A stretch of 64,000 bases of DNA, from contig NC_134474.1 in assembly GCF_964194025.1 (NCBI RefSeq), positions 55,428,001 to 55,492,000 of the forward strand. The letters are read 5' to 3'. The notes under the pieces are model-generated. The model made no database searches. It worked only from the letters and a program-made list of their open reading frames with translations, and was not told where the DNA came from. Shown in pieces: positions 9,320 to 63,524 of this stretch. The translations under genes were made by a program, and so were the position numbers. Each line of letters begins with the position of its first letter. Positions within the stretch are counted from its first letter, which is position 1. The stretch is from Convolutriloba macropyga (lineage: Eukaryota).

Positions 9320-9685
9320 TTATTCAACACTTGCCGAGTTTACGCGCTGTCGCCTTGGGCAAAAACACAGCCTCGTTACATTGATCAAAAAGACAACAAA
9401 CTCCAAAGCTGTCAATGCACTCCACCCAACCCACAGTCCAATATTACCCCCAAAATCAGCCATCAGTGACTGGAAACTGTACGCTTCAAGTTCCGAAATC
9501 CTCTCGAAGTTGAAGTGCTTGAAGTACACCTCGATTCTTACAAAGTTGTTTTTCATGTGTTGTTGAAGTTCGTCCATACTGCTCTGGGTAGCTTTGCTGT
9601 ACTGGGTGAAAATGCTGTTGAACCACCAATGTAAACGATCAGAATCGGACTCTTTGCGTAGGATGTTGATGAGATAGGGTGTGTA
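9320..9685 (-). CDS. DEG/ENaC gene terminal exon (knuckle, beta12, TM2, short C-tail)
   Basis: Acceptor ctatag|TAC, phase 0. Encodes YTPYLINILRK...NFVRIEVYFKHFNFERISELEAYSFQSLMADFGGNIGLWVGWSALTALEF...SASVE*, the typical pre-TM2/TM2 DxGGxxGLWxGxS signature. Confidence 0.93.
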   Translation of the reverse strand, partial: YTPYLINILRKESDSDRLHWWFNSIFTQYSKATQSSMDELQQHMKNNFVRIEVYFKHFNFERISELEAYSFQSLMADFGGNIGLWVGWSALTALEFVVFLINVTRLCFCPRRQRVNSASVE

Positions 9686-14100: not shown

Positions 14101-17100
14101 CATAATTGGCTGCAAGTTGGTGAAGGTTCGCGGTCCGTCTCCTCAATGTAACCTTTTACAATATCGTTCTGAATTAAGCTGCTGTAGGTGTCGGCTAACT
14201 GTTTGTCTTCATTGAGGCGCTTTTCCAATGATCGTAATTGGGCTTTTGCTAGAAAGTAATTGTTAGAAAATTGTATGTTTTGTTTCCAGGGTAGTCCAAT
14301 CTCATACCTCTCTCCGTTATGTTTTACTGTATCCTCGAAAATTTGTAGGGCTTTCTTGTCTTCTTGGTTTACTGTATTAGGTGAAGCCTTTGTTGTTCTT
14401 GTTCCTTCACAGGTCCGAAATAATTGTAGCATGTCTTCGTCCAAAATTGTCTCTTCTGACTTAACCCTATTGAACAAGGTTATATTACGATTGCATTGGT
14501 TCTTCTCTGTAATTTGTCTATACTTCTTTGGGACTGGTCCTGTTATTGTCCATTCTAATTGTGTGAGAACTCCGTACGGTGTTCCCGGTGGTCCGATTGT
14601 GTACTTGAGTGGAACTGTTGCTGTAAAAGCATCGGCTCCTATCAGAATACCTATTTTGTTGTCTCTGATTTGAGAAAAATTGATATCGCTTAAATGACCG
14701 AAGTCCTTACAAACGCTGTTGAGCATCTGAATTGGCACCGTCGGCATTAAGTCTGTGGTAGCAGTCGCAAAGACTGGTAAGTTAATGATAGGTCTACTGC
14801 TGTCGATGGCTCCAATCCCAAGAAAAATTTCTGTTGTTTCAATCGTGTGTTCTTGGTATAGTGATGCTACGGGTATTGTAACACATTTCCTATCACGAAT
14901 TCCTAAAGCATCTGCTATTGTCTTGGTAATTTGCGTATTGTCACTTCCACTGTCAAGGAGAGCGTAAGTTTCAATGGAGACCGTCTCCGAAAACACTGTT
15001 ACCGGTATTGCTTGGAGCTGAAAATGTGGTCGGATCCAACTGCTCAGCTGGTTATTACTGCAAGTGCAGTTCTGGTGTCGGTTATTGCTGCCTGAGAAGC
15101 TTTGCGAATTTTGGTCTGTTGAGTGCTGATATTGTTGATTAAAGTTTCCTGATGTTGGCTGCTGTTGTTGAACATTGGGCGTATTGGGCACTTGATGTGA
15201 TTGCCCGTAATAGAAGTTCCGGTTATGTCTGTTGTAGCTGTTACTATTGTTGTAGTTACCATTTGTGCTATTGTTGCTGTTGCTGTTGATGCTGCTGTTG
15301 CTGTTGTAGTTGTTGTTGTTGCTGCTGTTGTATCGGCTTCTGCTGCGTTGCCGGTTGTAACCACTGTTACCATTTTGTCTAGTTTGGTGATTGCAGTTGG
15401 GGTTACTGCTGCTCAAATTTTTGTTCCACGAAGAACTGTTGTTTGTGAAATTGAACTGGTTTCTGTACAAGTTATCTGCATTGTGTCGATATTCAGATGT
15501 TGATTGGTTTTGTCCTTGATTACTAGGCTGTGTTGTGTTGAAATTGTTACGGTGTATTGTTGAGTGATGAAAACCGTTACAATTGTCTACCTGGCATCTG
15601 TATTTGCTGTTGCATTGTCCTTTTGGATGTTCAGTAAGACAATTTGGGCATAAGTGCAGTTGTCGCACTGTCTGCTGTCTGTCGTACACGTTTTCACTCA
15701 AAAATTTTTGACATTTTCCTAAATTGTGGCTTTGTGAACAAAGCGGGCAATTCTTTCTGGCGTTGATCCTTTGTTCAGATTTTCCACGTTGGTGTGTTCT
15801 CTCATAGAATGAATTTCTGTTGTGAGTGCGTGGCATATCTTCGCACGCTTCGGCATACTTGTCTATCCAATCTTTGAAAGGAATCAAATTTGGGTTAACA
15901 AGTTCTTTGCGGATGACATTTTCGTTCCACTTTATTATCATTGCAGGAGGTAGTTTTTCTTTGGCTACTCTGAGAACGGCGGATGATTGCAGGTCCGGCG
16001 TAAACTCGTGAAGAAGAAAAGTTTGTACTAATTGTCTGAGAAACGCTGCAAATGAAATGAAGCTGTCTGGGTTGTCTGTCGAAGGCTTGGGCCAGCGTTC
16101 CAGTTTTTCAAGATATGCTGCAATAACAGTTTGTGGTCTTCCAAATCTTCTCTTGAGTTCAGTTATTACATCGTGGTAAAATTCTCCATTATATGAGTAT
16201 CCAAAAACGCTTTCCTTTGCGCGATCTGTGAGAGCGTTTTGGAGATAGGTGATTTTCCGTGCGTCCGAAAGAGACACGTTATCATGTATTGTTGATTTGA
16301 AATAACAATACCACTCGTGCCATTTGAGGGGGTCTCCGTTGTATGTCTTCAGTTGTGTCTTTGGCAAATTGATATTATGTACGGGTTTCTCTGATTTGGT
16401 GTAAATTGCAGATTGCGAAAATGTTCGTTGGTTGAATTGGTTGTGTGATATTCATGTAGTTGTGTAGCAGATTCGCAGTGAACTGTGGGTTGTCTGACAT
16501 TGGAGCTGTCCTCGTATCTCTCCATACTGTTCTCTCTGATTTCGTGTATTGCATGAGACTCGCTGCGGCAAGACCTTGTCTGTATTTCCGTGTCAGATGT
16601 GTCTGCTGATACTGTTGGACGGCTGTAGGTTGTCTGTGTTAACATGGTATTCTCATTGCAACGAGGTTGATTCCGATTCTCGGGTGAGAAAATGTTTCTA
16701 TCCCTTGTTTGTTTTTGTTTATTCGAAGCAAGAGTTCGTGAATTTGTTAGGCAACTTTCCTGTTGTGTTGATTGTTGGTGAGTTGTGCTTCCCACAATAA
16801 ATTGTAGTTTGGATGCTTGGTTCTTTGAGGAAACTTTTGCACGCGAATCGTTTCGTTGGTTTGTCTCTTCATCGCTGTCACTGTCACTGTCGTCACAGCT
16901 GTCCTCTGAGGGACAATTGCTAATACCTTTTTGTGCTATGAGCAGTTTTGAATTTCTGAGTTGTTTATCTGGAAGCTGATGGCTTTTAAATATTGCTGAG
17001 TGATTTACTATTGATGTTGTTTGGGGGTCCTGATTGTTTTTGTTGGGTTTCACAAACTGAAATGGTTCGGCAAATTGATTATGCCAATTTGTTCCAATGC

Positions 17101-18003
17101 ACTCGTTATGTTGATTGCTCTGGGTTCCCTTGGAAAGTTCAGGTTGTCGTTCGTTTCCTTCGTTTGAATCTTTAGGTTCACTATTGGAGGTCTGTTCAAC
17201 AAATGTTTGAGAAGACCCCTGTTGTAAACTGTTCCGCTCCCAATCTATTCGTTGATTACTAATTCCTATGCTGTTGTTTGCTGTGTTTTCTACAGTTTCT
17301 CCAATGATACGTTTGCAGGATTTATTCGACACAACTGTATCTCTGCCGTTTTTTCGATGACTGTCAGGCGAAGAATTGTCAGTGTCATTTCGAAAATTCA
17401 GTGATTGATATCTATCAATGCTGAGTGCGATTTCATTTGAGACAGAACAACTGGTATTGTTTCTTTCGGTCAGTGTCGGGCATGAGTCTTGTGGCTGTGA
17501 TATAGAGATGCGCAGACTTCTATCTGATGATGATTCTCTCGAGTTGTTAGATGAATTATGTCTTTTCGTAAGTTGTACCTCTGTGTGATTTTGGGCTGCA
17601 TTTTCTTTGTGCCTGGTGTATCTGTTTGATATAATTTCGATGAAGGCGCATACATTGTTGTTTTTGTAATAGGATTGCCTCCTGAAGCACCAACTGTGTT
17701 CATCTTTGATCTAGACAAACCATTTATAATTTTCTTCCATTTCAGCAATGTTGTTGTGCGTTCACCTGAGCGTTCGGCAACTGTGATGTTCTCGTTAGTT
17801 GTAAGGGTAAACTCGGAGATATTATCCAATAGCTTGTCCAAGCATGCCTTATGTTCCAGCAGTGTGTCATACGTGAGTTGAAGAACGTCAACGTCATCGG
17901 TCTGATACTGTTCCTCAAGAAAGTTAACTGCTGAGCCCCACTCAACTTCACGTCTCATTTGTTGGATCAACGTCTCTTTCCTTTTATTTGTTTTTGGTGC
18001 CAT
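11188..18003 (-). pseudogene. BEL/Pao gag-pol polyprotein, disrupted (about 3 frameshifts and 1 in-frame stop)
   Basis: DUF1759-like PKTQLKTYNGDPLKWHEW; triple knuckle CPLCSQSHNLGKC / CPNCLTEHPKGQC / CQVDNCNGFHHSTIH; protease ALLDSGSD; RT YMDD; RNase H LHVFTDAS...PKLELEA; integrase H-H-C-C, GLDYFGP, SDNGTNF, GGIWER. In-frame TAA at 12480-12482 and frame changes near ~17500, ~16370 and ~11440. Confidence 0.95.
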
Positions 18004-20916: not shown

Positions 20917-22916
20917 ACATCAACCAAAAATATGTTCTTATTGCATTTTTTAGTAATTACGACCTTTGTAAAGGTATCTACTACTATAATTTTCTTGAAA
21001 AGTGTTACATATATGGTTGTTGATGTATTATACCAGGAACGCTTTTTTTAGGAAAATAAATAACCGTTTCAGAAGAGATCACAATATTAATTTTTGGGGG
21101 GTGCCTAAACTCTTGTTTGTGACTATTTCGCTAGTCGAACAAAAAAATTGTTGAGTTAACTACCTACTGTGGGCTTTCTTCTCAAACCTGTGCTAATAAG
21201 CTCAAAATGTCTCTTAGACGAAGTTATTTATAGTTAAAATTTTTTGTTTTCTCTGACCAGGACAATTTTGACTATATATGACTGGGGGCGCTAGCCGAAA
21301 ATATCCGGAAAATGGTTTTGTCATTCTAGGTAGCTTATTGATAGATTAACGGTTAGAAGCCAACAGAAACTGCTTATGGCTCTACTTGAAACTAATTGAC
21401 CACTCAAAAACCAAAAAAAATACGCTTAGGGAAAAAACTAAATTCGCAGTACCTTTTTCAAATCTTTTTATTGCAAATCTTTTTATAAGAAAATGTGAAA
21501 ATTCACATAAAATCATAGTGCTTATATTAGGTGAACTATATCGAACGTCAATTAGTTGAAGTTTTTAATTCACTTTTTTGAACTGTTTTAGCTTTTAACT
21601 TGCTTTTTAACTGTTTTAATTGCTTTGCGTGAGTTAACACAGAAGTCATGAGTCTTGATGAGTAGGGCTGGGGGGGGGGGGGGTACTACGCGAAAGGAAA
21701 GGGGGCTATTTTTAATTGGTATTCTCCTGATGTCCAACAAAACCCGCCTACTGGCTAGCTACAAAAATCTTTTTTGACTAATATCGAGCTCTCGCATAGT
21801 ATTCCATCCCCCCGGCTAGTCAAAAGGGATCAAAAACAAATATACAAGACTGACACACCATGGAATTGTCTCCTCAAAACAATTTTGGTTTATCGCACGC
21901 TCAGAGACTAGTAAGGCGTAAGGCTCTAAGAGAACTGCCCAGTCACTTTATCCCCCCTCCCAGTGCTTTACCTGTTTCTCCCGTTTTTGAGGACGATAAG
22001 TTAAAAGGGTCAGGCGAGAAATCCGTCAAGCGAAAACTGGCATTAAAAAGACCACAGGACTATAATAGCTACTTGGTTCGAGAGAAATTAATTACTCCTA
22101 ATTGGCGTCTAAAAATTGATTCAAAGCCAGTACTTGGCCTGGTTACAAAAAAATCCCGTAAAATAATACTCGACATGAGGAAAAATAGCTGTGGTCAAAA
22201 GAGATTGCGCATTAACCTCCTTTTTCAGCTGAATGAAAGAAGATATGATAACTATTTTTGTTAGGCCACATAGAACTTCGTCATTTTTTGTGCTTTTTTT
22301 CAAGTCTTACTGCACTCTTAAACCAATTCAAAAGGTAACGCCCTATTGCAAAGTTACCCGCCAAAAGATCAATTAACAGTTAAACTCTTGGTCAAAAAAT
22401 TAATCTAAATTTTGAGCATTAAAATTTTGCAGGTATTGTAAATACGTAGTTACAGATACCAGAAAATCTCTTTACCAGCAAAAAATTAGACACACTTTTC
22501 TAATCTACATAGCCAGTATTTAAACGATTCTTGATAACTGACTCCATACTAATACCTCAAGGAAACGCAATTAGCTTTATGGCCCATGAGCTAGAAACAG
22601 CCTTCAGAAATCTTCCAAAGCAGTGGTGGCAGACCCAACAGACCTATTATCGATTCATTTCGGTCACCCAAGATGAAGTAAACGGCCCAAAACTGGTATA
22701 GCCCAGACTGACAATAAAATTATAAAAATTTCTCGGGTTTCTATATCTTCGGGTTTCTATATTTAAAATATCGGGTTTCCTTGAATTTCCCTGTAAAGGA
22801 TTCTCATGAAAAAACAGACAAGACAGAAACGGTCGATCAGTCAAAGAAGTGTTTCTGTATTGGTTCGATTTGCGCTGTCCAAACAATTTAGAATACTTTT
22901 TCAATTAATCAGATCC

Positions 22917-23113
22917 CTGAATAGTGGGCCATCCAGACTCGGACACTGAAGTCTGGTAATCTTCACTGCGACACTCGGGCGCACATGGACACTCGACAGA
23001 TGGGTCTCCCGCATTGACCAGTTTGTGAACTTCACTCACACACTCCCTCTCCTCCCTGTCCCACCCCTGACAGATCTTGTTAGTAGTCGTGTCGTTGCCA
23101 TCGTAAAAGTCAC
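22917..23113 (-). CDS. DEG/ENaC gene exon (Cys-rich thumb to WP motif); absent from the ORF track
   Basis: Acceptor ttatcag|GT, phase 1. Hand translation gives (G)DFYDGNDTTTNKICQGWDREERECVSEVHKLVNAGDPSVECPCAPECRSEDYQTSVSESGWPTIQ, the CxCxxxC...Y...S...WP thumb signature. Followed by ggatct (non-GT donor). Confidence 0.92.
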
Positions 23114-27934: not shown

Positions 27935-28202
27935 CAATGAAATTATCCACACAGTGACATCGATCCCACAACAGCGTCTGTAGACAAAACAGATCACACA
28001 CTCTTGAACTGTAAGGCCATTGCTGTCTGATCTCATCCGGAATGTCCAGCTCATCTGGGAATTCGTTCACGCAAGGTCCAAATCTTCCCCCAAGCCGTTC
28101 AACAATTTCTTTCCGGATGGCAATTTTGGCAACAGTTCCTGATGATACAGTTATACCATAGGCTTCTGGGATTGGGTACTGGTCCATTGGGTCTATGACA
28201 AC
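27935..28202 (-). CDS. DEG/ENaC gene exon (palm/beta-ball to start of thumb)
   Basis: ttctag|GTT ... ATT G|gtaagt, phase 0 to 1. VVIDPMDQYPIPEAYGITVSSG...ERLGGRFGPC...YSSRVCDLFCLQTLLWDRCHC. Confidence 0.93.
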
Positions 28203-28720: not shown

Positions 28721-28978
28721 CTGTGCCCCTCCATCATGAGCGAGAGACCCCACATAGTTATCGAAGTCTAGAAACAGAGTCACTTTCAACCCATACTGCT
28801 GGCCAGTCCTGGACGATGTCCGGATCCTCTCGAAATCTCCAGTGATATTGTCTCTATCTTTGTTCAAGATGGAGTTGAACGTGAAACAATTGCCGTACTT
28901 TGGGTTCTGGAACTTCTCAAAGTCTCCCGACTTACAGAGGCGACCATCGAACGTACATTGGACCACGAAGTCTTCGTA
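28721..28978 (-). CDS. DEG/ENaC gene exon (GNCFTFN region)
   Basis: tttcag|TAC ... CAG|gtttga, phase 0 to 0. YEDFVVQCTFDGRLC...YGNCFTFNS...GQQYGLKVTL, the ASC-family signature. Confidence 0.95.
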
Positions 28979-29374: not shown

Positions 29375-29561
29375 CTGCGTTCCAAAATGGTTCAGCTCAA
29401 ACTCATTGAAGGTTGCAAATCGTTCAAAGTCACTGTAGTCTGGCATTCTGGCTAGTTCATACACAGCTACCCAGTCATAGGGTTCAATGGGTACGTTAAA
29501 TGACTTGAAGGGATCCCAGTTCCAATAGTAAACATCGTAATTGTTCCAATACCACTCCTCA
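29375..29561 (-). CDS. DEG/ENaC gene exon (finger domain)
   Basis: attag|T GAG ... ACG CAG|gtaagc, phase 2 to 0. EEWYWNNYDVYYWNWDPF...PDYSDFERFATFNEFELNHFGTQ leads into the conserved G-x-Q...F-x-x-x-C-x-F-x-G motif. Confidence 0.85.
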
Positions 29562-30664: not shown

Positions 30665-30688
30665 AAGTACTCGGTGGGCCAGTAATCA
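30665..30688 (-). CDS. 24-nt microexon of the channel gene
   Basis: tgtttcag|TGATTACTGGCCCACCGAGTACTT|gtaagt, phase 2 to 2; reads (Y)DYWPTEY(F). Confidence 0.7.
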
Positions 30689-30763: not shown

Positions 30764-30788
30764 TATCCTTTTGACCTCCAGGACGGCT
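30764..30788 (-). CDS. 25-nt microexon of the channel gene
   Basis: tctttttag|AGCCGTCCTGGAGGTCAAAAGGATA|gtgagt, phase 1 to 2; reads (E)PSWRSKG(Y). Confidence 0.7.
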
Positions 30789-42849: not shown

Positions 42850-45517
42850 ATGGGTTTATGGCTGCAATTTTGTCAGAATACTTCGTTAACATATATGACT
42901 TTTAGGATCTTACTTCATATTTTAAGATCAATTCATATAAACTTTAATGAGCTAGACCAATTTATAAATCAAGAGAAGTCAAAACCTGATGTGATTGCAT
43001 TAACAGAAACCTGGAGCAATCAGTATACTCTCCAAAATGCTTACCAGGTGAATGGATATGGCCAGTTGTTGAGGAGTGACAGAGAAAGAAGAGGTGGAGG
43101 TGTAGGATTTTTTATTAGGAAAGGCATCAAAGTTCAAATTAAACAAAAACAAACAATGAACACCTACAACTTTTGAGAGTGGCGTTCTTAGGATATCAAA
43201 AGGAAATAGTGATAACTGTTGGTTATAAAACTTTGAAATATCGTATAGATGAGTACATAAACGTTTGTCAAGAAGACATTAATAAGTTCACTATCAAACC
43301 GGAGATTTTGCAAATTTATTGTTGAGATTTCAATTTAAATGTGATTGAACAAACGAACAAAATTGACAGGGTTTTGGATTTTTTTCTCATGGATCAGAAC
43401 CGATAAAAGTCACTTCTTGAACGGCAACCTGCATTGACGTTTTTTTTGCGAATTTTGAAGCCTCCGTAAATGTGAAAGATACAATGATCTCTGACCAAAA
43501 AGGAGTAGAATTGAGCAGCAAGGAAACAAGACTTGATCTTGAACACCCAGACAAAAAATTTCATTTTAGGCCCCTAAAAACTTCAAAATAAGGAACTTAG
43601 GTTCGATTAAATTTACAGTATTGTAACAAAACTGGGAACGAGAAATAAGCTTTATTTATCTTCCGATTGAGATTTCTGTTTTACAGATTTAACGAGAGTG
43701 ATAAAATAGGAATTGCATCGTCATGTACCCTTGCAACAGTTCAAAAAGCACACTAACAACAATCTAAACAGGTTCAAAAACCATGGTTGGATAACCAGAT
43801 CAAAAATCTGTCTTAAAAAACTAAAAGCCTATCAAAGATTGAGGAACGAACAGTCTGCCGAAAATAGAGAATATAATAAGCTGCGTTACCGTTAAAAAAA
43901 CCTAAAAACCTAACAAAAAAGGAAATAGAATTTAATGAACAAAAAATTGAAAATGCAAACAAAAATAAGAACTTATTTTTAATAATAGACGATATTAAGG
44001 GAACAAAAATGAAAAAGAAAAATGACAACCTGAAAGCTGATGAAATCAATAAGTATTTTGTTGAAAGAGGAAAGAAACTATCTCAAAGTTGTTATCAGTC
44101 GTCACACCTCAGGCGGGTCTGAAGGTTAGAGAAATCCATGTTCTTATTTAACGTCACAACAAAAGTTTTCGAAATTATTCAGCAAATGCTAAAAAAATGC
44201 TTCGGATCTGATTAACATTTCAAATAAACTGATTAAGTTCATCAATCCAAGCTTGTGTGAAGCATTGGCAAAATAATTAATCTTTAATTTGATGAGGGGC
44301 CTTTCCCTGGAACTCTGAAAATTGCCAATGTTATACCTCTGTACAGAAATGGTAACGAAAATGCATTTAGTAATTATAGACCAATATCACTGCTCACAGT
44401 TATTTCAAAAATTGTTATAAACAAAGCACAGTTTGGAAAGCACATTGTGATAAGAAAAGCACAATTGATGCTGTGTCGGAGGTTGTTGAAACAAAAATTA
44501 TTTGGGCTCGACAGAAAGTTACTATGGGGTTTTCATTGATTCATCGAAAGCTTTTGGTACTGTGAGTCATGATATTTTGCTCCAAAAATGTTTTGCGTAT
44601 GGTTTGAGGGGGAAATTTTATGACATTCTTAATTCACATATTTGACCAACAGACAACAATGTTTTTGTTTCAGTTAGCAAGCAGCAATCATCCTTTGAAA
44701 GCAATTTTGCAGTGTACCGTAGGGTTCTGTTTTAGGGCCACTTCTGTTTTTGATTTATGTAAACCATTTGCCTGATTTCGGTACAAACTGTAATGTAAAT
44801 ATGTTTACTGATGATACAAATATTTACGGAAAGGTGGATGACGGAATTAATTATACAATAGAAAAATGTCAGTTCGGATGGAATCAAATAAGTTCGCAAA
44901 AAATAGAAATAAAAGCAAGGCTATAAGTTTTGGTGGTACTAATGAGACACCTGAAACTCATGATTACAACATCGAATTTGTCTACCACAATAAATATTTG
45001 GGTGTACACATAGATAGTCAACTGAGCTTCAAATAACATCGAGAAAATAGTTAGTCGGATGAATTCGTTAACAGCGGTCATCTATCAATATAAAAACTTT
45101 CTCAATAGACACAAACTAGTCCGATTATACAAAGATTACGTTTAACCAAAATCACAGTACAGGGTTTTGTTGTATGGAGTGGCCAATAAAAGGAATCTAA
45201 AAAATAAGAGTGGTGGCAAAACAGAATTTTTCGTTTGTTTTTTTTTCAACTAAGAGATTGCAAAGCACTGACGAACTGCGATGAAAATAGTCGGATGAAT
45301 TCGTTAACAGCGGTCATCCATCAATATAAAAACTTTCTCAATAGACACAAACTAGTCCGATTATACAAAGATTACGTTTAATCAAAATCACAGTACAGGG
45401 TTTTGTTGTATGGAGTGGCCAATAAAAGCAATCTCAAAAATAAGAGTGGTGGCAAAACAGAATTTTTCGTTTGATTTTTTTTCAACTAAGATTGCAAAGC
45501 ATTGACGAACTGCGATG
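42850..45517 (+). mobile_element. Decayed non-LTR retrotransposon (APE + RT; CR1/L2-type)
   Basis: APE motifs PDVIALTETW, RSDRERRGGGVGFFI and DFN. RT motifs LKIANVIPLY...NYRPISLL, FIDSSKAFGTVSHDILL, VP*GSVLGPLLFLIYVN and FTDDT. Many stops and frameshifts. Confidence 0.9.
45054..45517 (+). repeat. Near-identical 236-bp tandem duplication at the LINE 3' end
   Basis: gtcggatgaattcgttaacagcggtcatc starts at 45054 and 45290; both copies end ...gacgaactgcgatg. Confidence 0.9.
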
Positions 45518-46186
45518 TAAACACAAAAAACCAAGAGAAGGCCAATAATAGCCCCAGCTATCGCTGTACGGCTATTAATAAAAGGACTAATCTGGTCAAA
45601 ACAAAAATTTTGCAAACGAAGCAAAGAAACCAGTCGCTCATAAATAGATTAAGAAGAATATATAATGTTTAAACTAAACTGGATGAAAGTATTGTTCAAA
45701 AAATTGGCTCATTTAATGCACAGGATTTAACAAACTTTTTACATTGTTTTAGGGAGTCATTTATTATGGATAACAGATTTTTGTTAACCTTTTTGTGGTA
45801 AGGAACAAGGTTCTAGGGCTAGTGCTTTTACTTGAATGTTTATCGAGCTGCATTTTTTTTGTAAAATTGGTCTTCTTATTAGACATTTTCTAAAGGTTAA
45901 TTAGAAAAGGGTTTTACCAGGGTAAAATATGATTTGAGCGGGTTTGAATTACCAAAATAAGTAGACTTTGAGAAGAAGTAATAGGCATCACTTGACAGGT
46001 CTAGTGACCTATTGATGTCCTTTCGAGTTTTGTTTTGTTGTTTGTAAATTTATAAATGCAAGCAATGGAATAAACTCGAGAACTAATTTATTATTATTGC
46101 AGTGGTTTGAGCTGAAAGATTAACTTAGAGCTGAAATTTACTTAATTGACACTTTATGATAAATTAGAGCAAAATCTTATTCTAAC

Positions 46187-49100
46187 CGGTTGTTGTTGTC
46201 GGAGTGCTAGTAGTGACATCACCAGTTCTACGAACTCTTCTACTGTACATTTTTCTATTTTGCATAACGCGTTCTCGGTCAACCTGCCTTTTCATTTTCC
46301 TCCTTTCGGCTCTTCTTTCAGATTCCTTCAAGTAGTTATGATACAAAACTTCTAACTTCTGATCAGCTGTGAGTGTATTTGAATGTCGTTTCAACCTAGG
46401 GACCACATCTCCTACCAGAGGCTGGGTTATCCTAGAAGTGGTTGCAGAAGTCTCGGTTTCCTCATCAATTGGTATTGAAATCGGCATCAAAAGTGGCGAT
46501 TCGGAACTCGTACTCTCAGAAGTTGAGACCCCATTAGAAGTCGTATTCGCCAACAACGTAGAAGTGGTAACCGATGAATTGGTACGTGAGGCAGTATTCC
46601 CTGGGACTGTCAAAGTAGCGTTCAATGTAGTAGTAGGTCCTGTTGATGTTGTACTAAATGTATTAGACAGCACTGTCGAAGTTGTGTTAAATGTAGTAGT
46701 TGGTAGTGTCGACGTTGTATTAAATGTGGTAGTAGGTACTGTCGAAGTTGTATTAAATAGAGTATTAGGTACTGTCGAAGTTGTATTAAATAGAGTATTA
46801 GGTACTGTCGAAGTTGTATTAAATGCAGCAGTCGGCACATTCGATGTCGTACTAAAGGTAGTAAGGACTGTCGAAGTTGTGTTAAATGTTGTAGAAGTAG
46901 GCACTGTCGATGTTGTATTAAATGTGGTATTAGGTACAGTCCAAGTTGTATTAAATAAAGTAGAGAGTACTGTCGATGTATTTGATGTAGAGGTGGGCAC
47001 TGTCGATGTTGTAGTAAATGTAGTAGACACTGTGGAAGTTGTGTTAAATGTAGTAGTAGGAACAGTCGAGGTTGTATTAAATATAGTAGAAAGTACCGTC
47101 GACGTTGTATTAAAAGTAGAAAAGGGTACTGTCGATGTTGTATTAGACGAAGTAGTTGGTCCTGTCGAAGAAGTCTGAAATGAAGTAGGTACAGTGGAAG
47201 CTGTGCTAAATGTGGTAGTAGGTACTGTCGATGTTGTACTAAATGTAGTAGTTGGTACAATCGATGTTATATTAAATGCAGTAGTGGGTCTTTTCGATGT
47301 TGTATTAGTTATAGTAGAGAATGTCGAAGTTGTGTTAAATGTTGTAGTACTAGTAGGTAGTGTCGATGTTGTATTAAAATTGGTAGTAGGTACCGTCGAG
47401 GATGTATTAAATTTAGTAGTAGGTACTGTCGAAGTTGTATTAATTGTAGTAGTAGTAGTAGTAGTAGGTACTTTCGATGTTGTATTAAATGCAGTAGCAG
47501 GTACTGTCGAAGTTGTATTAAATGTAGTAGTAGGTACTGTCGAAGTTGTATTAAATGTAGTAGTAGGTACTGTCGAAGTTGTATTAAATGTAGTAGAAGG
47601 TAAAGTCAAAGTTGTATTAAATGTAGTAGTAGGTACTGTCGAAGTTGTATTAAATGTAGTAGTAGGTACTGTCGAAATTGTACTAAATGTAGTAGTAGGT
47701 ACTGTCGAAGTTGTATTAAATGTAGTAGTAGGTACTGTCGAAGTTGTATTAAATGTAGTAGTAGGTACTGTCGATGTTGTATTAAATGCAGTAGTAGGTA
47801 CTGTCGAAGTTGTATTAAATTTAGTAGTAGGTACTGTCGAAGTTGTGTTAATTGTAGTAGTAGTCGCTGTCGAAGTTGTATTAAATGTAGTAGTAGGTAC
47901 TGTCGAAGTATTAAATAGAAAAGTAGGTTCTGTCGAAATTGTGTTAATTGTAGTAGAAGGTACTGTCGAAGTTGTGTTAACTGTAGTAGTAGGCGCTGTC
48001 GAAGTTGTATTAATTGCAGTAGTAGGTACTGTCGAAGTTGTATTAAATTTAGTAGTAGGTACTGTCGATGTTGTATTAAATGCAGTAGTAGGTACTGTCG
48101 AAGTTGTATTAAATTTAGTAGTAGGTACTGTCGAAGTTGTGTTAATTGTAGTAGTAGTCGCTGTCGAAGTTGTATTAAATGTAGTAGTAGGTACTGTCGA
48201 AGTATTAAATAGAAAAGTAGGTTCTGTCGAAATTGTGTTAATTGTAGTAGAAGGTACTGTCGAACTTGTGTTAATTGTAGTAGTAGGTACTGTCGAAGTT
48301 GTGTTAACTGTAGTAGTAGGCGCTGTCGAAGTTGTATTAATTGCAGTAGTAGGTACTGTCGAAGTTGTATTATATGTAGTAGTAGGTACTGTCGAAGTTG
48401 TATTAAATGTAATAGTAGGTACTGTCGAAGTTGTATTAATTGTAGTAGTAGGTACTGTCAAAGTTGTGTCAATTGTTGTAGTAGTAGGTGCTGTCGAAGT
48501 TGTGTTTATTGTAGTATTAGGCAGTGTCGCAGTTGTGTTTATTGTTGTAGTAGTAGGTGCTGTCGAAGTTGTGTTTTTTGTAGTAGTAGGTACTGTCGAA
48601 GTTGTGTTTATTGTAGTGGTAGGAGGTGCTGTCGAAGTTGTGTTAATTGTAGTTGCAGGATCTGTCGAAGTTGTATTAATGGCAGTTGTAAGAACCGTTG
48701 TAGTCGCATCCGTTGTTGAGAAAGCGCTAAAATTTGTCGCTGTGCCTGAAATGGATGAGCTTGAGCTCGAGGGCTGTGGATATGATGTTGAAACAGATGT
48801 TAGAACAGTGGACGTGGTAGTCGAACTTGATGAGCTCGAGGTTGAGATTGAAGTTGTTCTGGTGGTTGAAGTAGTCGTTGGTTGCGCCTCAGTAGGAACC
48901 CAAGTTCCGGAACCCTGTAGAGGGTACTGCAAATACGAAATGTTAAAGCCGAGCTTGCGGACTGAGAAATCAGTTACAAATTGGACTGTCAACATATTGG
49001 AAGGTGACCGAACGATCAACGATCGGTCGGATGAACCAACAAGTGATGTTGTTATTATTCCACACACTCGATCTTCGCCCTCGAACTGAAGAACAGAATC

Positions 49101-49213
49101 GTCCGTTCCGTCAAGAAAAAGCAAATAATCGATGCAATCTTTCCGTTCACCAACTGTATTTGCGAATTGAATATCCAAAAGTGGATTGATAATTATTGCA
49201 ACGCCTTTGCTGT
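46187..49213 (-). CDS. 3027-nt exon: CUB C-terminal half, Thr/Ser mucin stalk and polybasic furin-site segment
   Basis: Acceptor tttttag|AC (phase 1) and donor ACC G|gttaga (phase 1), so the ORF-track stop at 46182 lies in the intron. CUB motifs C-x-DYL...DG...CG...S-x-SNMLTVQFVTDFSVRKLGFNISY. Confidence 0.88.
46600..48680 (-). repeat. Coding 33-bp VNTR (11-aa unit NTTSTVPTTTF), roughly 60 units
   Basis: Plus-strand unit aatgtagtagtaggtactgtcgaagttgtatta, with frame-preserving variants only. Confidence 0.95.
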
Positions 49214-49762
49214 CTAAAAAAGAAAAAACCAGCCGGAAACTTCAGGAAAAATGAGAGAACAAATGCTGAAAAGGCCCGATATAGTTCCAATAGGGGACAA
49301 TAGAATAGCAGGATTTAAATAGTTGAAAAAGAATAATTCCAGAAAATTGAACCTTGGGGGGGGGGGGGGTCAAATTTTTTAAATTAATTTTGCGTTTGAT
49401 TTATAATTTGTCATCATGTAACTTTAACCGCTCGGTCAATTAACATGTTTCAGATTTTTTAAAAAATTGTGACATCAACAAAAGCTGGTGGCAATTCATC
49501 AAACGGCTCTACTATCCTTGACACTTCAGATATGTAGAAATTCAACCACTAATATTACCAAGTCTCCGTCCAATAGGTTTCCAGTAAAAAGTACGGCGAA
49601 TCAACGGTGAACCAAAATTCTGCTGGCAATAGCTGTTTATCATAGCTACAGCAGCAGCAAAATATCGTACCGCATTCCTTTTCCGGTTGGAAAAGTCTTA
49701 CAACTTAAAAAAAATCCATTTCTGGTATGTTCAAATTCACATTTAAGAAGAAAAAGCCCAAC

Positions 49763-49898
49763 CATTTTGAGACTGAATATTCCATTCGCAATCGAGTCCA
49801 TTCTCATACAGTGTTCTGTTCTCATATCCAACTGAGGTGAAGAACTGCTCCCCATCTAAGGCTGTCAACGTCCATGAACAATTTTTAACACAGTTGAA
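49763..49898 (-). CDS. Exon: last LDLa Cys and CUB N-terminal half
   Basis: gttttag|TTC ... AAT G|gttggg, phase 0 to 1. FNCVKNCSWTLTALDGEQFFTSVGYENRTLYENGLDCEWNIQSQN matches the CUB F-x-S-x-x-Y...Y-x-N-x-x-x-C-x-W-x-I pattern. Confidence 0.9.
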
Positions 49899-51370: not shown

Positions 51371-51869
51371 AACATAGCTGGCAGATTGCCAGAAAATAGC
51401 CGCAATAGATTCGTAGATCGGCAGTCTAAAAACAACATTAAAAAAGACAGACCAAAAAAATTCGTCTTTTCATTGAAGGCTGATCTGTTATATTTTGATT
51501 AAAAATCTGTATAAGTTATTGCTGCCTCTATTAGCTGATCTCAAATAACCTTCATTTAGAGTGACACACACCCATTTGACCTTATCTCTTTGAATTAAAG
51601 TAAATAAAAGTCAATTTTAAAGTGAGGAAGTCATTTTTGAGAGTGAGGTAAGTCAAGTGTGACCAAAAATTTAATCACGCGCATGAACAAAAAAACTCGC
51701 TCCACTAAGAGCGAAAAATGACGTCACACATGCAATTCAGTTGAAATTGCATGAACGAATGAAAAAAAAGTGGCTGTGACGTCATATGGTCGTAACAAAA
51801 ATCATGACGACGAAATAAAAAAACCAAGAGAAGGCCAATAATAGCCCCAGCTATCGCTGTGCGGCTATT
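51371..51869 (-). mobile_element. Helentron/DINE-1-like element, family 1 (~500 bp)
   Basis: aacatagct-GGCAgatTGCC-agaaAATAGCCGC ... GCGGCTATT. The last ~50 bp also occur alone at ~45529-45576. Confidence 0.65.
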
Positions 51870-53906
51870 AATAACAAAAATTTCAAACAATTTTTTAAAA
51901 CCTTCAGTCACATCAACAATAAGCTTTCCACAAACAAATAGTGAAGAGATTAATTTTATGATTACGACGCCAATGAGAGATGTCATTAGTGAGACAAGGC
52001 TTTAAAAAAATTAACGAAAACAGGCACAGCTGAACTTTTGATCTTTTAAGAATTAGGTTTTGATTAGAAGTCAATCTGGTCCGTAATTAACACGCAAAAA
52101 AGGCAAATTATATTTTTAAAAAAGACGACACCTCCCATTAAAATCTGTCTTATTTTTTAAAACAAATTTAAAATCCACAGGTAGAACAAAGTTGTTTGTC
52201 CATTGAAATAAATTGTCCATTTATTGCCGAAATAGATAACTTAAGGAAATATCAAAATTAAAAGATAGATTAGCAAAAAACAAGTAAGTTTTCTCTGCAA
52301 ATAATAGATAGTTTAACTAACAACTCCTTAAAGCGAAATCATCCTGTCATCAACTAAACGCGGTCATAAAACTACAAAAAAGAACAACGAATACTGGAAA
52401 AACTCAAGAGTTCGTTAAAAAATTTAAGAAAACACTTTCTCGAAGCCATAAAAACCATGCACATTACTCAAAAGGCAAAACATCTATTCGATGGTTCTCA
52501 ATCGAACAAAAACGTGACCTCCCATTAATTGAACTCCTAAACGAAAACAGACTCGTCTGTTAATGCGGTGGTAAAAATGCAGAAAAAAAATTTAATAAAG
52601 ACATACCCAAAGCACAATCCGGAAGGCCGCAAGAATTTGAGTTTCAGAACACTTTCTTAGGAGCCGGAGGTAAAAATAGCCCTCATATAAGTAATCACAG
52701 ATTGTTTCAGCAGTTTTCAGGTCTGCACTACCGGACCACTTTGACAAAGTGGGCTAAATAAGCGTATTTGGTGCCACTTTTCATGGAAAAAAGAGGAAAA
52801 ATTTTTGAACTTTAACAAAAAAAAGACGGTTCAAACAATTTAAAAACTTACTTTGGATCAGTACAAAGAAAAATAAAGAGACTATCAATAACAATTTTAG
52901 CATTTTTTGTGCAAAATTGGTCAGAATCTCGGCAAAAATCACGAATAAAACAACAAAAGTGAGGCTAACAATCACAAATCTTCAATCCTTCGTAGCTCCT
53001 CGGAAAAGCAAAAATCAGTACCAATCTTTTGGATTTCATATTCTACGCTTGACGAGCTTTCTAATGATGCCACTCACAACTCTGTACGATGAATATATCG
53101 ATCGGTTAGCATGTAGTTCCCCCACTAAAGTGAATCGGAACACAAACAGCATTCATAGCTTTGATGAAAACCACAAACTACAAATTCAAGGGCATCGAAT
53201 AAGCTGGAATGCTTGAAAATGCAACGCAACTAATTGTTCAAATAACATCTAGAAGGCCAGCAGTGTATGTCGATTTCGCGACCCCGTGCAAATGTCACCC
53301 CCCCCCCCCCCACCCTCCAATCGTTTTCTTGATCACTCATTCTTTATTTTCTGCACCCTGGCACAATAAGTTCAGTCAGAATCCAGCCAGCTCCAAGTCA
53401 TAAATCCGAAAGGATTGAGAACTCTTAACCGCCACGTATAGTCTCTTAACCGCCACTGTTCTAACAGCTAGACATGTATGGCGCATGCTAGATGTATCCT
53501 GGACGACCTAACATCGTGCGTTGAACGTAAAAACGCCCTGCTGCATAATCATATTTCCGGTTTCCGCCCTCGCACGCTTTTTGTTAGACTAGTCCCATTT
53601 TTGCTTTTTGGAACTGTTTTCAGAGTAACATGCGTTACCACCAACATAAATGACCTCATACTGGAGCCACTAGTTTTGCACATCATTCTCCCCTGCAGTT
53701 GTTATGGATACAGCTTGCAACTGTGAAGTGAAAGTAGGGAATTCTTCCTTTACTCTGTCCAAAATAGAACTACAAACGACCGACGTAATCAAATAATGAG
53801 AATTTAAATTGCGACAGCTTTGTCTAGGAGACTTGCATTACAAGTTCAATGGGTGAAGACAAAATGCAAGAATGCCTTTTATTAAATTGTCTAACTAGTC
53901 ACTCAC

Positions 53907-54082
53907 TGGAGGACCCTTTGACTCGTCAATCCCGTCTAGACACTCTACAACCCCATCACAAGGCAGAGCACAAATGGGGTCAGCGTCCCCACACTCTATA
54001 TACCCATCCAGACAGTCCCCTGCAAACTCGACCCACTCATCCGGCTCCTGATCAGTCCAGTATGTGGAACAGTTGATTGCAG
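53907..54082 (-). CDS. Exon encoding an LDL-receptor class A-like repeat
   Basis: cggcag|CT ... CCA|gtgagt, phase 1 to 0. (T)AINCSTYWTDQEPDEWVEFAGDCLDGYIECGDADPICALPCDGVVECLDGIDESKGPP (CDGxxxCxDGxDE). Confidence 0.9.
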
Positions 54083-54649
54083 CTGCCGAAACGCATCACC
54101 ACGTATATTCAAAATGAACCTTAAGCGTGAATGAAACATGAAACAGCTTTAATGATGAAATAAATATTGGACAAAATTTTATTAGTATATTTGACCACTG
54201 AGAAAATTATTAGTCAAATTATTATATCAGTCAAAAGGATGAGAAAAATTTGTATCAATTCGATATTCGCATCACGCTCACTCCAAACCCATGATAAAAA
54301 CTAAATAGTTAATTGTAGTACAAAAATCTGGGGTGGACAAAACCATTCTAGAAAAATAAACCCTCATCATTGCTTCTGGCTTCATTGTGCACTGTGGTTG
54401 GATTCCGACATTCGGAAACAGTTAAAAAGTACTCCATGACATTTTACGTTATGAATCAGATCTATTACATTAAATGTAAGTCGCACTTGAGCGTAATGAG
54501 TAGCATTGCTCCTATCTTCACATGTTTTAACAATCCTTAAACGTCAGCCTACACCAACATGGTTAAGCTCCTGATCTGCACATGTTCTTGTGCTCATTAA
54601 GCATGCAGCAAAAACCAGCGAGACAAAAAAAGCCATTGATCAAAAATTT

Positions 54650-56665: not shown

Positions 56666-56759
56666 TGAAGTTATCATACTCCGATGGTAGTCCTCCCTCA
56701 TCCCAACAGTCTTCACACTCGCATGTCCCATCACACAACCACAACTCCGAAACACACTC
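56666..56759 (-). CDS. Exon encoding an LDLa-like repeat (C-terminal half)
   Basis: gtctag|GAG ... TTC A|gtaaga, phase 0 to 1. ECVSELWLCDGTCECEDCWDEGGLPSEYDNF. Confidence 0.85.
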
Positions 56760-58479
56760 CTAGACATTTACAGCAGAAAACTCACAAAACTGCAGAATAC
56801 AAAATACGCAACACTACATCATTAATCGTTCCATAAATATTATATGAAACGAAACAAGTTCAGCTGGCAATTGTTGAGTTTAATTTTTGTTTTTCAGTCG
56901 TGAAAAAACTCGAATTTTTTGATCTGCACCGATTTCACACAAATTTGTGTTCACTAATATAAAACTGAAAAACAAATCTCAGCGTATAGAAGCAATTGAT
57001 TATTGGAGAAAAGGCTGAGGAGTTATCAAAATATCGTTAACAGTGTCGCCAATAATAACACTATCAGGGAGAGATTTGCACAGCTAAAATTCTGTTGGTG
57101 AATTCCAATAAAATTTTGGGAGGCGCTGCAGAGTTTTCTTTTGTAGGAATTGACTCTCAAGTACATTACCTGAAAAACAACTGTTTATACCGAGTATAAA
57201 AATTCGAAGATGTAATTTTCTCGTTAACATGTTTAAAGATTAGAGTTGTAAGCATTGAAGTAAAGTAGCTAAAGTTTGCTTAGTTACCTCAAAATTGAAC
57301 TAATCCCTAAATGTTCCAAAATTTTTTCAGAAATCGGGGAATAAATATGCGAGTCCGGCTTCTCTCTTGTCAATTTCACTTTTTGTTTATGCATCGTAGA
57401 GAAAAAAAAACCATTTTAGCCCTCGCGATCTAGGTTTCTTTTTCAAAAAAAATTATTAGAAATTCGAAAAAAAAAATGAAATTTTCGAAAAAAATGAGAA
57501 GGAAAAAGAACGATTGCTTGGAGGCGAGGCAAGTGGGGGAGGGGCAGATCGCACTGAAGAGAGAAAGAGATCGCAATTTAAGGAAGAAACGAAAAAAACA
57601 TTGCAGTAAATTTAGTTAGCTTAAATTGAGATTTTTAAATAATGCTCAGGCCTAAAAATAAAAAAAATGAACTATATAACTGAAAATTTCCAGAAAAAAT
57701 AATTGTATTTTTCTCTCAAAACTCTGTCTAAAAGACATTTTTATCCGTCTCTCTGTTTTTCGCTTGTTAAAAACTAATGTACGAACATTTTTATTCTCTG
57801 TATCAAAAAATGTGAAATTGAAGACTTCAGGCAGAGTAGAGCTCTCAAAATCGCATAAATCAACATTGAAAAGGTAAAACAAAAAGAAAGATGTATTCTT
57901 TTCTCAATTCTAGAGTTGTTTTTGCGAAAAAAAAATCTCATTTAGTCAGAACAAACCATTTGTGTTTTTTGAACCTTGAAACGTTGCCAAACACATATCA
58001 TGAAATCAGCATCAAATAAACCAAATTAATAATCAAAAATAGAAAACTTTTACATCTTACTTTTATGTTTTCTTCATAATGTCAGAGCAGATGTTTCGAA
58101 AGAATCTTCTCTAGCAAAATGAAAGACAGATCAAGTTGAAAATTAGCGAGTTTATGGATTGTCAGGTTAAGAAATGTAAAAGTTATTTACATTTTTTGAA
58201 AATGAGAAAATTATTCTTCTTATATCTGTATTGTGAAATTGCTCTTCGAACTGATTCTTTCGAGTCTTTGGGCGTTTAGGCAAAAAATAGATTCTTCAAA
58301 GATTGCGAAACTCTTCATATGACCTTCTTTTGAAAGAAAAAAGAAATTTCTTATTTCAGTTATCAAAGAATTAGTTAAATTTACCTATTTCTTTAAAAAT
58401 ACTCTTACTTAAAAAAGGGAAAACCCACAACATCAAATTTATAACCAATGTTCCCAAAAGCTGCAAAATAATTTAAAAA

Positions 58480-63227: not shown

Positions 63228-63524
63228 TTACGAAGACTCCGACTTGATGTTGATGTTGTTGTGTTCTCTTTCATGATGGCGCTTGAGATTTGATCTGTAT
63301 ATGGTTTGGAACTCGCAGAGGTCGCATTTTGTCGGTTGAATGCGCCGCTGATGAATCCGTGATACGCGACGCGCAGTGATGTATTGCGCACGTGACTTGT
63401 AGTCACAGTACGCGCACTCGTACCTTGCGCTCAGCCACCACCACAGTCTGACTCGAGCCCGTCTTTTTCTCATGTTTACAATCAGCTCGCCCCTTTCATC
63501 ATAAAGTTCTACGACCTTTCTCAA
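63228..63524 (-). CDS. C2H2 zinc-finger fragment (one intact and one degenerate finger)
   Basis: YECAYCDYKSRAQYITARRVSRIH (first His replaced) and KCDLCEFQTIYRSNLKRHHEREH. Start and gene structure unclear. Confidence 0.6.
   Translation of the reverse strand: MRKVVELYDERGELIVNMRKRRARVRLWWWLSARYECAYCDYKSRAQYITARRVSRIHQRRIQPTKCDLCEFQTIYRSNLKRHHEREHNNINIKSESS

What the first reader, a model, noticed from the sequence alone, without database searches (positions are those of the whole stretch)
46225..46400. Paired furin sites flank a 53-aa excisable tract between the mucin stalk and the channel core
Seen: ...PRLKR|HSNTLTADQKLEVLYHNYLKESERRAERRKMKRQVDRERVMQNRKMYSRRVRR|TGD..., with two R-x-(K/R)-R sites and an internal KMKR. 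Known: vertebrate alpha-ENaC is activated when two furin cuts in the finger domain release an inhibitory tract. Inference: a similar proteolytic switch sits here and would also uncouple the stalk from the C-terminal half. It independently supports placing this exon in an ENaC finger domain.
Basis: partly seen in the sequence, partly recalled or inferred. Interest (0 to 1): 0.72.

Follow-up and report, generated by a model that had tools for sequence, protein, structure and literature searches.

The report
Conserved furin-site pair in acoel ENaC-like channel
The two furin-type cutting sites are real and lie in the outer "finger" of a sodium-channel-family protein of an acoel-like worm, and relatives keep such sites at the same place, so the channel is probably cut during maturation much as the vertebrate kidney channel ENaC is, though no cutting has been shown.

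Summary
On the minus strand, RLKR (46386-46397) and RRVRR (46227-46241) bracket a 53-aa basic tract that also holds KMKR.

RNA-like contigs of run X3 show that this exon (49213-46187) is spliced. Upstream it joins the first CUB exon. Downstream it joins two micro-exons (30788-30764, 30688-30665) that lead in frame to the ASC finger exon. The tract is therefore luminal, between helices α1 and α2 of a DEG/ENaC finger, and not a tail of another protein.

Within this one sequence the motif count is not significant, because the tract is so basic (P=0.26). The support comes from comparison:
- Twenty distinct post-CUB linkers of family members hold 24 R-x-[KR]-R motifs, against 0.87 expected from shuffles.
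- 17 of the 20 linkers have at least one motif.
- All five nearest relatives have paired or multiple sites.
- A Symsagittifera relative of one paralogue keeps RKRR|S inside an otherwise unalignable linker.

Cleavage itself, and any ENaC-like relief of inhibition, remain inference. The insertion is not homologous to ENaC's GRIP domain. A word search of the scan's notes found no other finding of this kind.

The parts
46386..46397 (-). Site 1, R-L-K-R (cut predicted after R, before H-S)
   Evidence: Translation. Five nearest relatives carry an R-x-[KR]-R as the first site of a pair, but placed directly after the CUB domain.
46227..46385 (-). 53-aa basic tract between the two predicted cuts (HSNTL...RRVRR); 14 R and 6 K in the 57 aa that include site 1
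   Evidence: Present unchanged (0 other letters) in RNA-like contig X3 record 17.
46287..46298 (-). Internal K-M-K-R (context RRKMKR|Q), a secondary polybasic site
   Evidence: Its quality as a site is judged from general knowledge of furin preferences, not tested.
46227..46241 (-). Site 2, R-R-V-R-R (cut predicted before T-G)
   Evidence: In relatives the last site always directly precedes the aromatic/acidic segment.
46187..49213 (-). Exon holding the second half of CUB, the mucin array, the tract and TGDVTTSTPTTTT. Acceptor AG at 49215-49214; donor G|GTTAGA with GT at 46186-46185.
   Evidence: X3 joint 49213/49763 with CT..AC ends, and a loose end at 46187. CUB Pfam hit at E=0.0054.
46606..48680 (-). 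Thr-rich tandem array: 33-nt period, 62 copies, mucin-like, with 58 N-glycosylation sequons
49763..49898 (-). Exon with the first half of CUB
   Evidence: X3 record 23 joins it to 49213; sequence read.
53907..54086 (-). Second Cys-rich (LDLa-like) module exon, spliced to 49898
   Evidence: The X3 loose end at 49898 matches 53907-53936 exactly; tblastn to paralogues.
56673..56783 (-). LDLa module exon (boundaries approximate)
   Evidence: tblastn.
30764..30788 (-). 25-nt micro-exon spliced to 46187 (AG acceptor, GTGAGT donor)
   Evidence: The 30 letters of the X3 contig beyond 46187 match it.
30665..30688 (-). 24-nt micro-exon (encodes DYWPTEY)
   Evidence: The last 5 letters of the X3 loose end (TGATT) match its start. 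It has canonical AG/GT and fits the reading frame.
29375..29561 (-). Finger exon: aromatic/acidic segment plus the alpha2-alpha3 region with PDYSDF
   Evidence: Frame closes with the micro-exons; 55% identical to P0047.
28721..28978 (-). ASC core exon (profile positions 150-215)
   Evidence: Pfam ASC E=3.9e-10.
27935..28202 (-). ASC core exon (profile positions 231-318)
   Evidence: Pfam ASC E=2.9e-9.
22917..23113 (-). ASC exon (profile positions 331-381). The boundary predicted by homology is followed by GG, not GT.
9320..9685 (-). TM2 exon with G-W-S at the selectivity-filter position, plus the stop codon
   Evidence: Pfam ASC E=2.7e-17; translation.

Best explanation
The tract is a processing cassette for proprotein convertases (furin-type enzymes). 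It lies in a large insertion in the finger domain of a DEG/ENaC channel subunit of an acoel-like animal. The order of parts is: TM1, beta1-2, alpha1, LDLa, a second Cys-rich module, CUB, a mucin array of about 790 aa, RLKR, a 53-aa basic tract ending in RRVRR, an aromatic/acidic segment, alpha2/alpha3 (PDYSDF), the ASC core, and TM2.

Shown here: the gene structure and splicing; the luminal position between alpha1 and alpha2; and strong, position-specific conservation of R-x-[KR]-R in relatives.

Inferred: a convertase cuts after RLKR and RRVRR in the secretory pathway, and possibly after KMKR, releasing the basic peptide. This would open the covalent loop that ties the LDLa-CUB-mucin module to alpha2. 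It would leave a new N-terminus just before the aromatic/acidic segment. The two halves would be expected to stay together through the palm sheet, as they do in cleaved ENaC. Whether excision raises channel activity, as in ENaC, is the least supported step; I put it at roughly 0.3.
For: Gene structure: X3 covers exons only, removes a GT..AG intron (49214-49762), and leaves the genome at the GT donor at 46186 to continue into micro-exons 15.4 kb downstream. The frame stays open through all of these exons. ASC Pfam matches run co-linearly exon by exon, with the tract exon falling between profile positions 76 and 150. Intronless paralogues show the same order of parts in single ORFs.

Conservation: in 28 aligned family proteins there are 28 motifs in 2,527 post-CUB linker residues, against 5 in 17,866 residues elsewhere. 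Composition-preserving shuffles of 20 distinct linkers expect 0.87 motifs; 24 are observed, and 17 of the 20 linkers have at least one. The alignment consensus keeps R-x-x-R-S in the linker. The five nearest relatives (P0047, L043, L044, L045, L046) all have 2 to 4 sites spanning 37-59 aa. L001 and its Symsagittifera relative P0001 share RKRR|S while the rest of the linker is unalignable. Among the listed sites P1' is most often Ser. A hemichordate LDLa-CUB-ASC protein has no such motif, so the sites do not simply come with the domain architecture.

Enzyme and access: P-domain exons of proprotein convertases match at four places on three contigs of the genome. The equivalent tract in P0047 is modelled at pLDDT below 50, which suggests it is exposed.
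Against: No protein-level evidence of cleavage exists. Within this tract alone the motif count is what its basic composition predicts (P=0.26). Site 1 has His at P1', which is unusual among the family sites listed. The inter-site tracts of relatives share no clear sequence motif, unlike ENaC's defined inhibitory peptides. AlphaFold2 gives no confident docking of the tract. In this gene the first site is separated from CUB by the mucin array, unlike in all relatives. The family sequences are related to one another, so the counts are not independent events. The exon before TM2 lacks a GT donor at the boundary predicted by homology, so an intact full-length product is not proven.
Confidence: 0.6

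Rival explanations
1. The tract is an uncut basic linker. It might pair electrostatically with the adjacent aromatic/acidic (possibly Tyr-sulfated) segment, or bind sulfated glycans. On this view the R-x-[KR]-R strings are by-products of basic composition.
For: Shuffles of the window tract give the observed number of motifs. The tract is followed by an acidic or aromatic segment in all relatives.
Against: Single-site relatives have only the four basic residues within otherwise neutral or acidic linkers. One example is L001, with 3 R and 3 K in 111 aa, three of those R and one K forming its RKRR site, shuffle P=0.0014. The motif form R-x-[KR]-R with Ser most often at P1' is kept while the surroundings diverge.
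Confidence: 0.15
2. The sites are cut, but the purpose is to release something rather than to gate the channel. That could be a secreted basic peptide (a built-in propeptide or ligand), or loosening of the LDLa-CUB-mucin module from the finger.
For: Paired sites 31-66 aa apart recur in relatives. Other invertebrate DEG/ENaCs are peptide-gated (general knowledge; FaNaC structures appear among the matches).
Against: Inter-site sequences are not conserved. Many family members have a single site and therefore release nothing. The N-terminal module stays membrane-anchored through TM1, so it cannot be shed by these cuts alone.
Confidence: 0.14
3. The locus is a decaying gene copy and the sites are relics with no present function.
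For: GG instead of GT at the homology-predicted donor before the TM2 exon. Introns hold a BEL/Pao element and LINE fragments. The genome has many ASC copies with internal stops.
Against: All coding exons found are open and in frame. The locus is transcribed and spliced. The X3 contig runs 1,544 nt beyond the tract exon, about the length expected for the remaining coding sequence plus a 3' UTR.
Confidence: 0.08
4. The segment is the cytosolic or C-terminal tail of a separate CUB-mucin protein that ends at the TAG at 46184-46182.
For: The open frame does run into a TAG three bases after the donor.
Against: The RNA-like contig leaves the genome exactly at 46187, before that TAG, and continues into the downstream micro-exons. 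Single-ORF paralogues place the same region between CUB and the ASC core. The TM-like ORF at 45388-45624 is a high-copy repeat.
Confidence: 0.02

Closest known systems
Vertebrate ENaC alpha and gamma subunits: GRIP domain with paired polybasic (furin/prostasin) sites that release an inhibitory tract
   Same: Same superfamily (the best PDB sequence matches of the relative P0047 are human ENaC gamma and alpha, E about 1e-33 to 1e-32). Same insertion point between finger helices alpha1 and alpha2 (PMC6197857). Two R-x-[KR]-R sites tens of residues apart. The human alpha subunit's sites are RSRR and RRAR (PMC8791634).
   Different: There is no sequence or fold homology to GRIP, which is four beta strands with a conserved disulfide. 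Here the insertion is LDLa, a second Cys-rich module, CUB, a mucin array and a disordered linker. The tract is basic and helix-prone rather than a hydrophobic beta strand. No inhibitory core motif is conserved. Cleavage and any effect on gating are untested. The literature treats GRIP polybasic tracts as unique to ENaC and tied to the move onto land (PMC8791634), whereas the named relatives of this gene are marine (Symsagittifera, sea stars, hemichordates).
Uncharacterised LDLa-CUB-ASC proteins of acoels (for example Symsagittifera roscoffensis LOC134848073 and LOC134839620) and the JGI transcript protein P0047
   Same: Same domain order and the same post-CUB R-x-[KR]-R followed by a Tyr/Asp-rich segment. 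P0047 is co-linear with every exon of the window gene at 45-63% identity in most exons (25% in the second CUB exon) and has REKR, then 41 aa, then RRKR.
   Different: None of them has the ~790-aa mucin array between CUB and the first site. P0047 is 848 aa in total. Strict orthology of P0047 is not established, because some exons match other paralogues equally well.
Ambulacrarian DEG/ENaCs with modular finger insertions (Saccoglossus, Ptychodera, Acanthaster, Patiria)
   Same: LDLa, CUB, TSP1 or SRCR modules are inserted before the ASC core. Patiria XP_038073461 has a Ser/Thr-rich insert, then RRKR, 7 aa, RQRR, then an aromatic/acidic segment.
   Different: Most lack polybasic sites at this position, and Ptychodera has none at all. 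Their module sets differ.

Membership tests
DEG/ENaC (Pfam ASC, PF00858) | Sequence match to the ASC profile across the extracellular core and both TM regions, in co-linear order | tested here: met
   Exon-by-exon matches to profile positions 19-76 (TM1 exon, just outside the window in L040), 150-215, 231-318, 331-381 and 390-455. The relative P0047 matches at E=2.6e-76.
DEG/ENaC (Pfam ASC, PF00858) | G/S-x-S selectivity-filter motif in TM2 | tested here: met
   G-W-S in ...IGLWVGWSALT... of the TM2 exon. Paralogues have the same.
DEG/ENaC (Pfam ASC, PF00858) | His-Gly motif before TM1 | tested here: not met
   There is no HG in the pre-TM1 sequence of the L040 exon, P0047, L001 or L005. This is a clade peculiarity and does not overturn the profile match.
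[quoted passage not shown] | Insertion between finger helices alpha1 and alpha2 | tested here: met
   In the AF2 model of P0047, alpha1 is 118-142, the modules and linker are 153-440, and helices resume at 441-494 before beta3. The definition is taken from PMC6197857.
[quoted passage not shown] | P1-P4 beta-strand fold with a conserved disulfide, homologous among ENaC subunits | tested here: not met
   The PDB sequence alignments to ENaC start only after the insertion (P0047 residue 490 onward). The insertion consists of LDLa and CUB domains plus a low-confidence linker.
[quoted passage not shown] | Two polybasic sites flanking a tract | tested here: met
   RLKR and RRVRR are 53 aa apart. The site pair is conserved in the five nearest relatives.
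[quoted passage not shown] | Double cleavage occurs and raises open probability; the tract peptide inhibits | not testable with these tools
   This needs western blots and electrophysiology.
Furin/proprotein-convertase substrate | R-x-[KR]-R in a luminal, exposed segment, with a convertase encoded in the genome | tested here: met
   Motifs. Position in the extracellular loop. pLDDT below 50 in the relative's tract. PF01483 P-domain matches at four places on three contigs.
Mucin-type domain | Tandem Ser/Thr/Pro-rich repeats | tested here: met
   62 copies of a 33-nt unit; 59% Ser/Thr and 59 Pro in 793 aa. Glycosylation itself cannot be tested here.

The most novel reading that the evidence does not exclude
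Gating relief by proteolysis arose independently, outside vertebrates, in a marine acoel (and perhaps echinoderm) DEG/ENaC clade. On this reading a convertase excises a basic peptide that, until cut out, masks or holds the adjacent aromatic, sulfotyrosine-like acidic segment and the alpha2 helix. Double cleavage would arm the channel and mechanically free a CUB-mucin sensor module.
Probability: 0.22. Interest if true: 0.8.

Novelty: new variant of a known kind. Interest (0 to 1): 0.6.

Why it matters
Activation by double cleavage in the finger is regarded as a speciality of vertebrate ENaC. Its GRIP polybasic tracts are described as unique to ENaC and as having co-evolved with the move onto land (PMC6197857, PMC8791634). 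This report describes a different DEG/ENaC clade whose named relatives are marine. It carries a conserved polybasic site, or a pair of sites, at the same alpha1-alpha2 position, inside a non-homologous modular insertion. If the sites are cut, the finger loop would be a recurrent place for protease control in this channel family. Short intronless paralogues such as L001 and L005, and the 848-aa P0047, would make the idea directly testable in oocytes. If the sites are not cut, the conserved motif still marks an unexplained constraint.

Tried and rejected
1. The TM-like ORF at 45388-45624 was considered as a following exon, which would have made a type I CUB-mucin protein. It was rejected. The same sequence recurs at 51705-51986, has enormous depth in the DNA runs, and shows many loose ends, so it is a high-copy repeat.

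2. Direct splicing of the tract exon to the finger exon at 29561 was rejected, because the phases do not fit. The RNA contig revealed two micro-exons that resolve this.

3. A search for the TM1 exon inside the window found nothing. It lies about 2.1-2.3 kb beyond the window end (L040).

4. The look-up of sequencing runs listed no run recorded as RNA. X3 was recognised as RNA-like only from its exon-only coverage and spliced contigs. Only 30 letters of the contig beyond 46187 are visible, so the remaining 1,514 nt are not verified.

5. The search for homologous proteins with P0047 returned only P0047 itself and one Ptychodera protein, because of word-index limits. No named orthologue of the window gene was obtained. 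The reciprocal search shows that P0047 is nearest to the window gene in one exon but not uniquely so in all.

6. The profile search was swamped by cubilin-like multi-CUB proteins. Only about 30 of the 150 listed hits were channels.

7. I looked by eye for a conserved motif in the inter-site tracts. A weak pattern resembling S/T-D-L-x-L appears in some of them. It is not convincing and I make no claim for it.

8. Three literature searches found no paper on DEG/ENaCs that carry LDLa or CUB modules, or on cleavage of DEG/ENaCs outside vertebrates. This covers the held library only.

9. No furin-site predictor such as ProP or PiTou was available.

Full report
**Observation**

The finding lies on the minus strand. 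Translation of 46182-49178, and of the exon as spliced, gives the quoted peptide:
- PRLKR|HS has RLKR at 46386-46397.
- The internal KMKR is at 46287-46298.
- SRRVRR|TGD has RVRR at 46227-46238.
- 53 residues lie between the two predicted cuts.

Upstream there is a tandem array of 62 copies of a 33-nt unit (46606-48680). It encodes a region that is 59% Ser/Thr, with 58 N-x-S/T sequons. Before the array lies the C-terminal half of a CUB domain.

The tract is very basic, with 14 R and 6 K in 57 aa. Shuffling it gives on average one R-x-[KR]-R, and two or more in 26% of trials. The single sequence therefore does not exceed chance.

**Is it part of the channel gene?**

The genome holds many ASC (DEG/ENaC) genes. 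Several are intronless and show a constant order of parts within one ORF: TM1, beta1-2, helix alpha1, LDLa, a second Cys-rich module, CUB, a linker, the PDYSDF finger helices, the ASC core and TM2.

In the window, ASC-matching exons lie on the minus strand at 28978-28721, 28202-27935, 23113-22917 and 9685-9320. They match the Pfam profile in co-linear order. The TM1 and alpha1 exons lie 1.2-2.3 kb beyond the window end.

Four public runs hold the locus. Three cover introns and repeats evenly, which is how DNA behaves. The fourth, X3, covers exons only. In X3:
- One contig removes 49214-49762, an intron with GT..AG ends on the minus strand. It then continues beyond 49898 into 53907-53936.
- Another contig ends its genomic match exactly at 46187, where the genome reads G|GTTAGA, and runs on for 1,544 nt.
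- The first 30 of those letters match a 25-nt micro-exon at 30788-30764 (AG acceptor, GTGAGT donor) and the start of a 24-nt micro-exon at 30688-30665.

With these two micro-exons the frame runs without a stop into the finger exon at 29561-29375, and then into the core exon at phase 0.

The tract is therefore transcribed, retained in the spliced RNA, and located in the extracellular loop. The in-frame TAG three bases beyond the donor is intronic. The idea that this is a tail of a separate protein is contradicted.

**Position within the fold**

An AlphaFold2 model of the closest database relative, P0047, has mean pLDDT 70.9. Its elements run in this order:
- TM1, at 51-81.
- Two palm strands.
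- Helix alpha1, at 118-142.
- The modules and linker, at 153-440.
- Helices at 441-494.
- The beta-ball.

This is the alpha1-alpha2 site at which ENaC carries its GRIP domain (PMC6197857). The tract of P0047 has pLDDT below 50, apart from a low-confidence helix at 399-421. It looks exposed, but the model gives no evidence that it docks anywhere.

**Conservation**

- P0047 is an 848-aa protein from a 3-kb, mRNA-like JGI contig. It is co-linear with every exon of the window gene, at 45-63% identity in most exons and 25% in the second CUB exon. After its CUB domain it has REKR, then 41 basic residues, then RRKR, then a Tyr/Asp-rich segment.
- Four closer paralogues were fetched from the genome. 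L043 has four sites. L044, L045 and L046 each have a pair 37-44 aa apart.
- More distant paralogues and database proteins have either one site directly followed by a Tyr/Asp-rich segment, or a pair flanking 30-66 polar or basic residues.
- In an alignment of 28 family proteins, R-x-[KR]-R occurs 28 times in 2,527 post-CUB linker residues and 5 times in 17,866 other residues.
- Shuffles of 20 distinct linkers that keep composition expect 0.87 motifs. 24 are observed, and 17 of the 20 linkers carry at least one. The sequences are related, so these are not 17 independent events. Outside the motif, however, the linkers cannot be aligned.
- L001 and its Symsagittifera roscoffensis relative (53% identity overall) share RKRR|S, followed by a Gly-Ser repeat in one and a Pro/Thr-rich stretch in the other.
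- Among the listed sites P1' is most often Ser.
- A Ptychodera LDLa-CUB-ASC protein has no such motif, and most other ambulacrarian relatives lack one at this position. One Patiria protein has a Ser/Thr-rich insert, then RRKR, 7 aa and RQRR, then an aromatic/acidic segment.
- P-domain exons of proprotein convertases match at four places on three contigs of the genome.

**What differs in this gene**

The mucin array sits between the CUB domain and the first site, whereas every relative has the first site 5-38 residues after CUB. The array is therefore a lineage-specific insertion into the linker, upstream of the cassette.

**Mechanism**

The best-supported reading is a convertase processing cassette. 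Cutting at both sites would release the 53-aa basic peptide and open the loop that ties the LDLa-CUB-mucin module (anchored by TM1, beta1-2 and alpha1) to helix alpha2. It would also expose an aromatic/acidic N-terminus. By analogy with cleaved ENaC, the two halves should stay associated.

That the sites are under selection is well supported. That they are cut is likely, at about 0.65. That excision relieves inhibition is a hypothesis, at about 0.3. Two things count against that last step: the inter-site sequences are not conserved, and no docking is predicted.

The rival readings are an uncut charged linker, peptide release as the purpose of cutting, a decaying gene copy, and the refuted tail of a separate protein.

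**Comparison with what is known**

[quoted passage not shown] The insertion is not a GRIP domain, because it has no homology to one and different folds. It shares GRIP's location and its paired polybasic layout.

The acoel and ambulacrarian proteins are in databases only as "uncharacterized" or under automatic names. Three literature searches found no description of them or of their sites.

**Verdict**

This is a new variant of a known kind. It is of moderate to good interest because it would be a convergent, testable parallel to ENaC proteolytic control.

**Organism**

The best named hits are from the acoel Symsagittifera roscoffensis at about 53% identity. Unnamed ENA records hold matches about 98% identical or identical. 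The genome is thus probably that of another acoel, but this identification is inferred.

Noticed in passing
window 22911-22935 (-) and 9685-9730 (-): The exon boundary predicted by homology (...GWPTIQ | YTPYLINILRK...) is followed in the genome by GGATCT, not GT. Reading on in frame hits TAA after three codons. The TM2 exon is at 9685-9320, about 13 kb downstream, and not next to 22905 as the other first-reader note (s1-220418) assumed. It could be a non-canonical donor, an assembly error or a defect.
   Followed up: partly
window 11394-18003 (-): A BEL/Pao LTR retrotransposon (DUF1759 gag, RVT_1, Peptidase_A17, integrase) with long open frames sits in the last intron of the channel gene.
   Followed up: yes
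window 42850-43176 and 44502-45036 (+): Fragments of a non-LTR retrotransposon lie in the 15.4-kb intron after the tract exon. One is an APE-type endonuclease, Pfam E=2.3e-5. The others are reverse-transcriptase-like ORFs recognised by eye.
   Followed up: partly
window 45343-45740, also 51705-51986 and about 45250-45300: A very high-copy repeat, with summed contig depth up to about 350,000 in the DNA runs. Its translation mimics a transmembrane segment (AIAGAIIGLLLVF), which is a trap for gene models.
   Followed up: partly
window 29375-29561, 30665-30688; loci L018, L028, L030, L031, L039: In every family member the last polybasic site is followed by a Tyr/Asp-rich or Trp/Tyr-rich acidic segment (DYDYDY runs of up to about 100 aa) just before the finger helices. 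This looks like a tyrosine-sulfation region. Its function is unknown.
   Followed up: no
L040:2053-2310 (-), outside the window; P0047, L001, L005: This clade of DEG/ENaCs lacks the His-Gly motif before TM1 that is conserved in ENaC and ASIC.
   Followed up: no
L013 and L014 (G000:C1, about 67.7-68.0 Mb): A sub-group of paralogues has a second long low-complexity insert between alpha1 and the first LDLa module. It ends in RSKR|G or RARR|S directly before the module, so polybasic sites also mark that other linker-module boundary.
   Followed up: no
window 46166-46217: A second haplotype in runs X1 and X2 differs at four places. Three are silent or intronic. One (46217) changes Val to Leu in TGDV, just after site 2. 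No variant was listed inside the tract 46227-46400.
   Followed up: partly
P0125, P0137, P0153, P0160, P0183 (Saccoglossus, Acanthaster, Patiria, Ptychodera): Ambulacrarian DEG/ENaCs also carry LDLa, CUB, TSP1 or SRCR modules (one record is named as a Kringle-domain protein) before the ASC core. A modular finger insertion shared by acoels and ambulacrarians may bear on their relationship.
   Followed up: partly
window 63228-63524 (-): An ORF with C2H2 zinc-finger-like repeats lies inside an intron of the channel gene. It was not examined.
   Followed up: no
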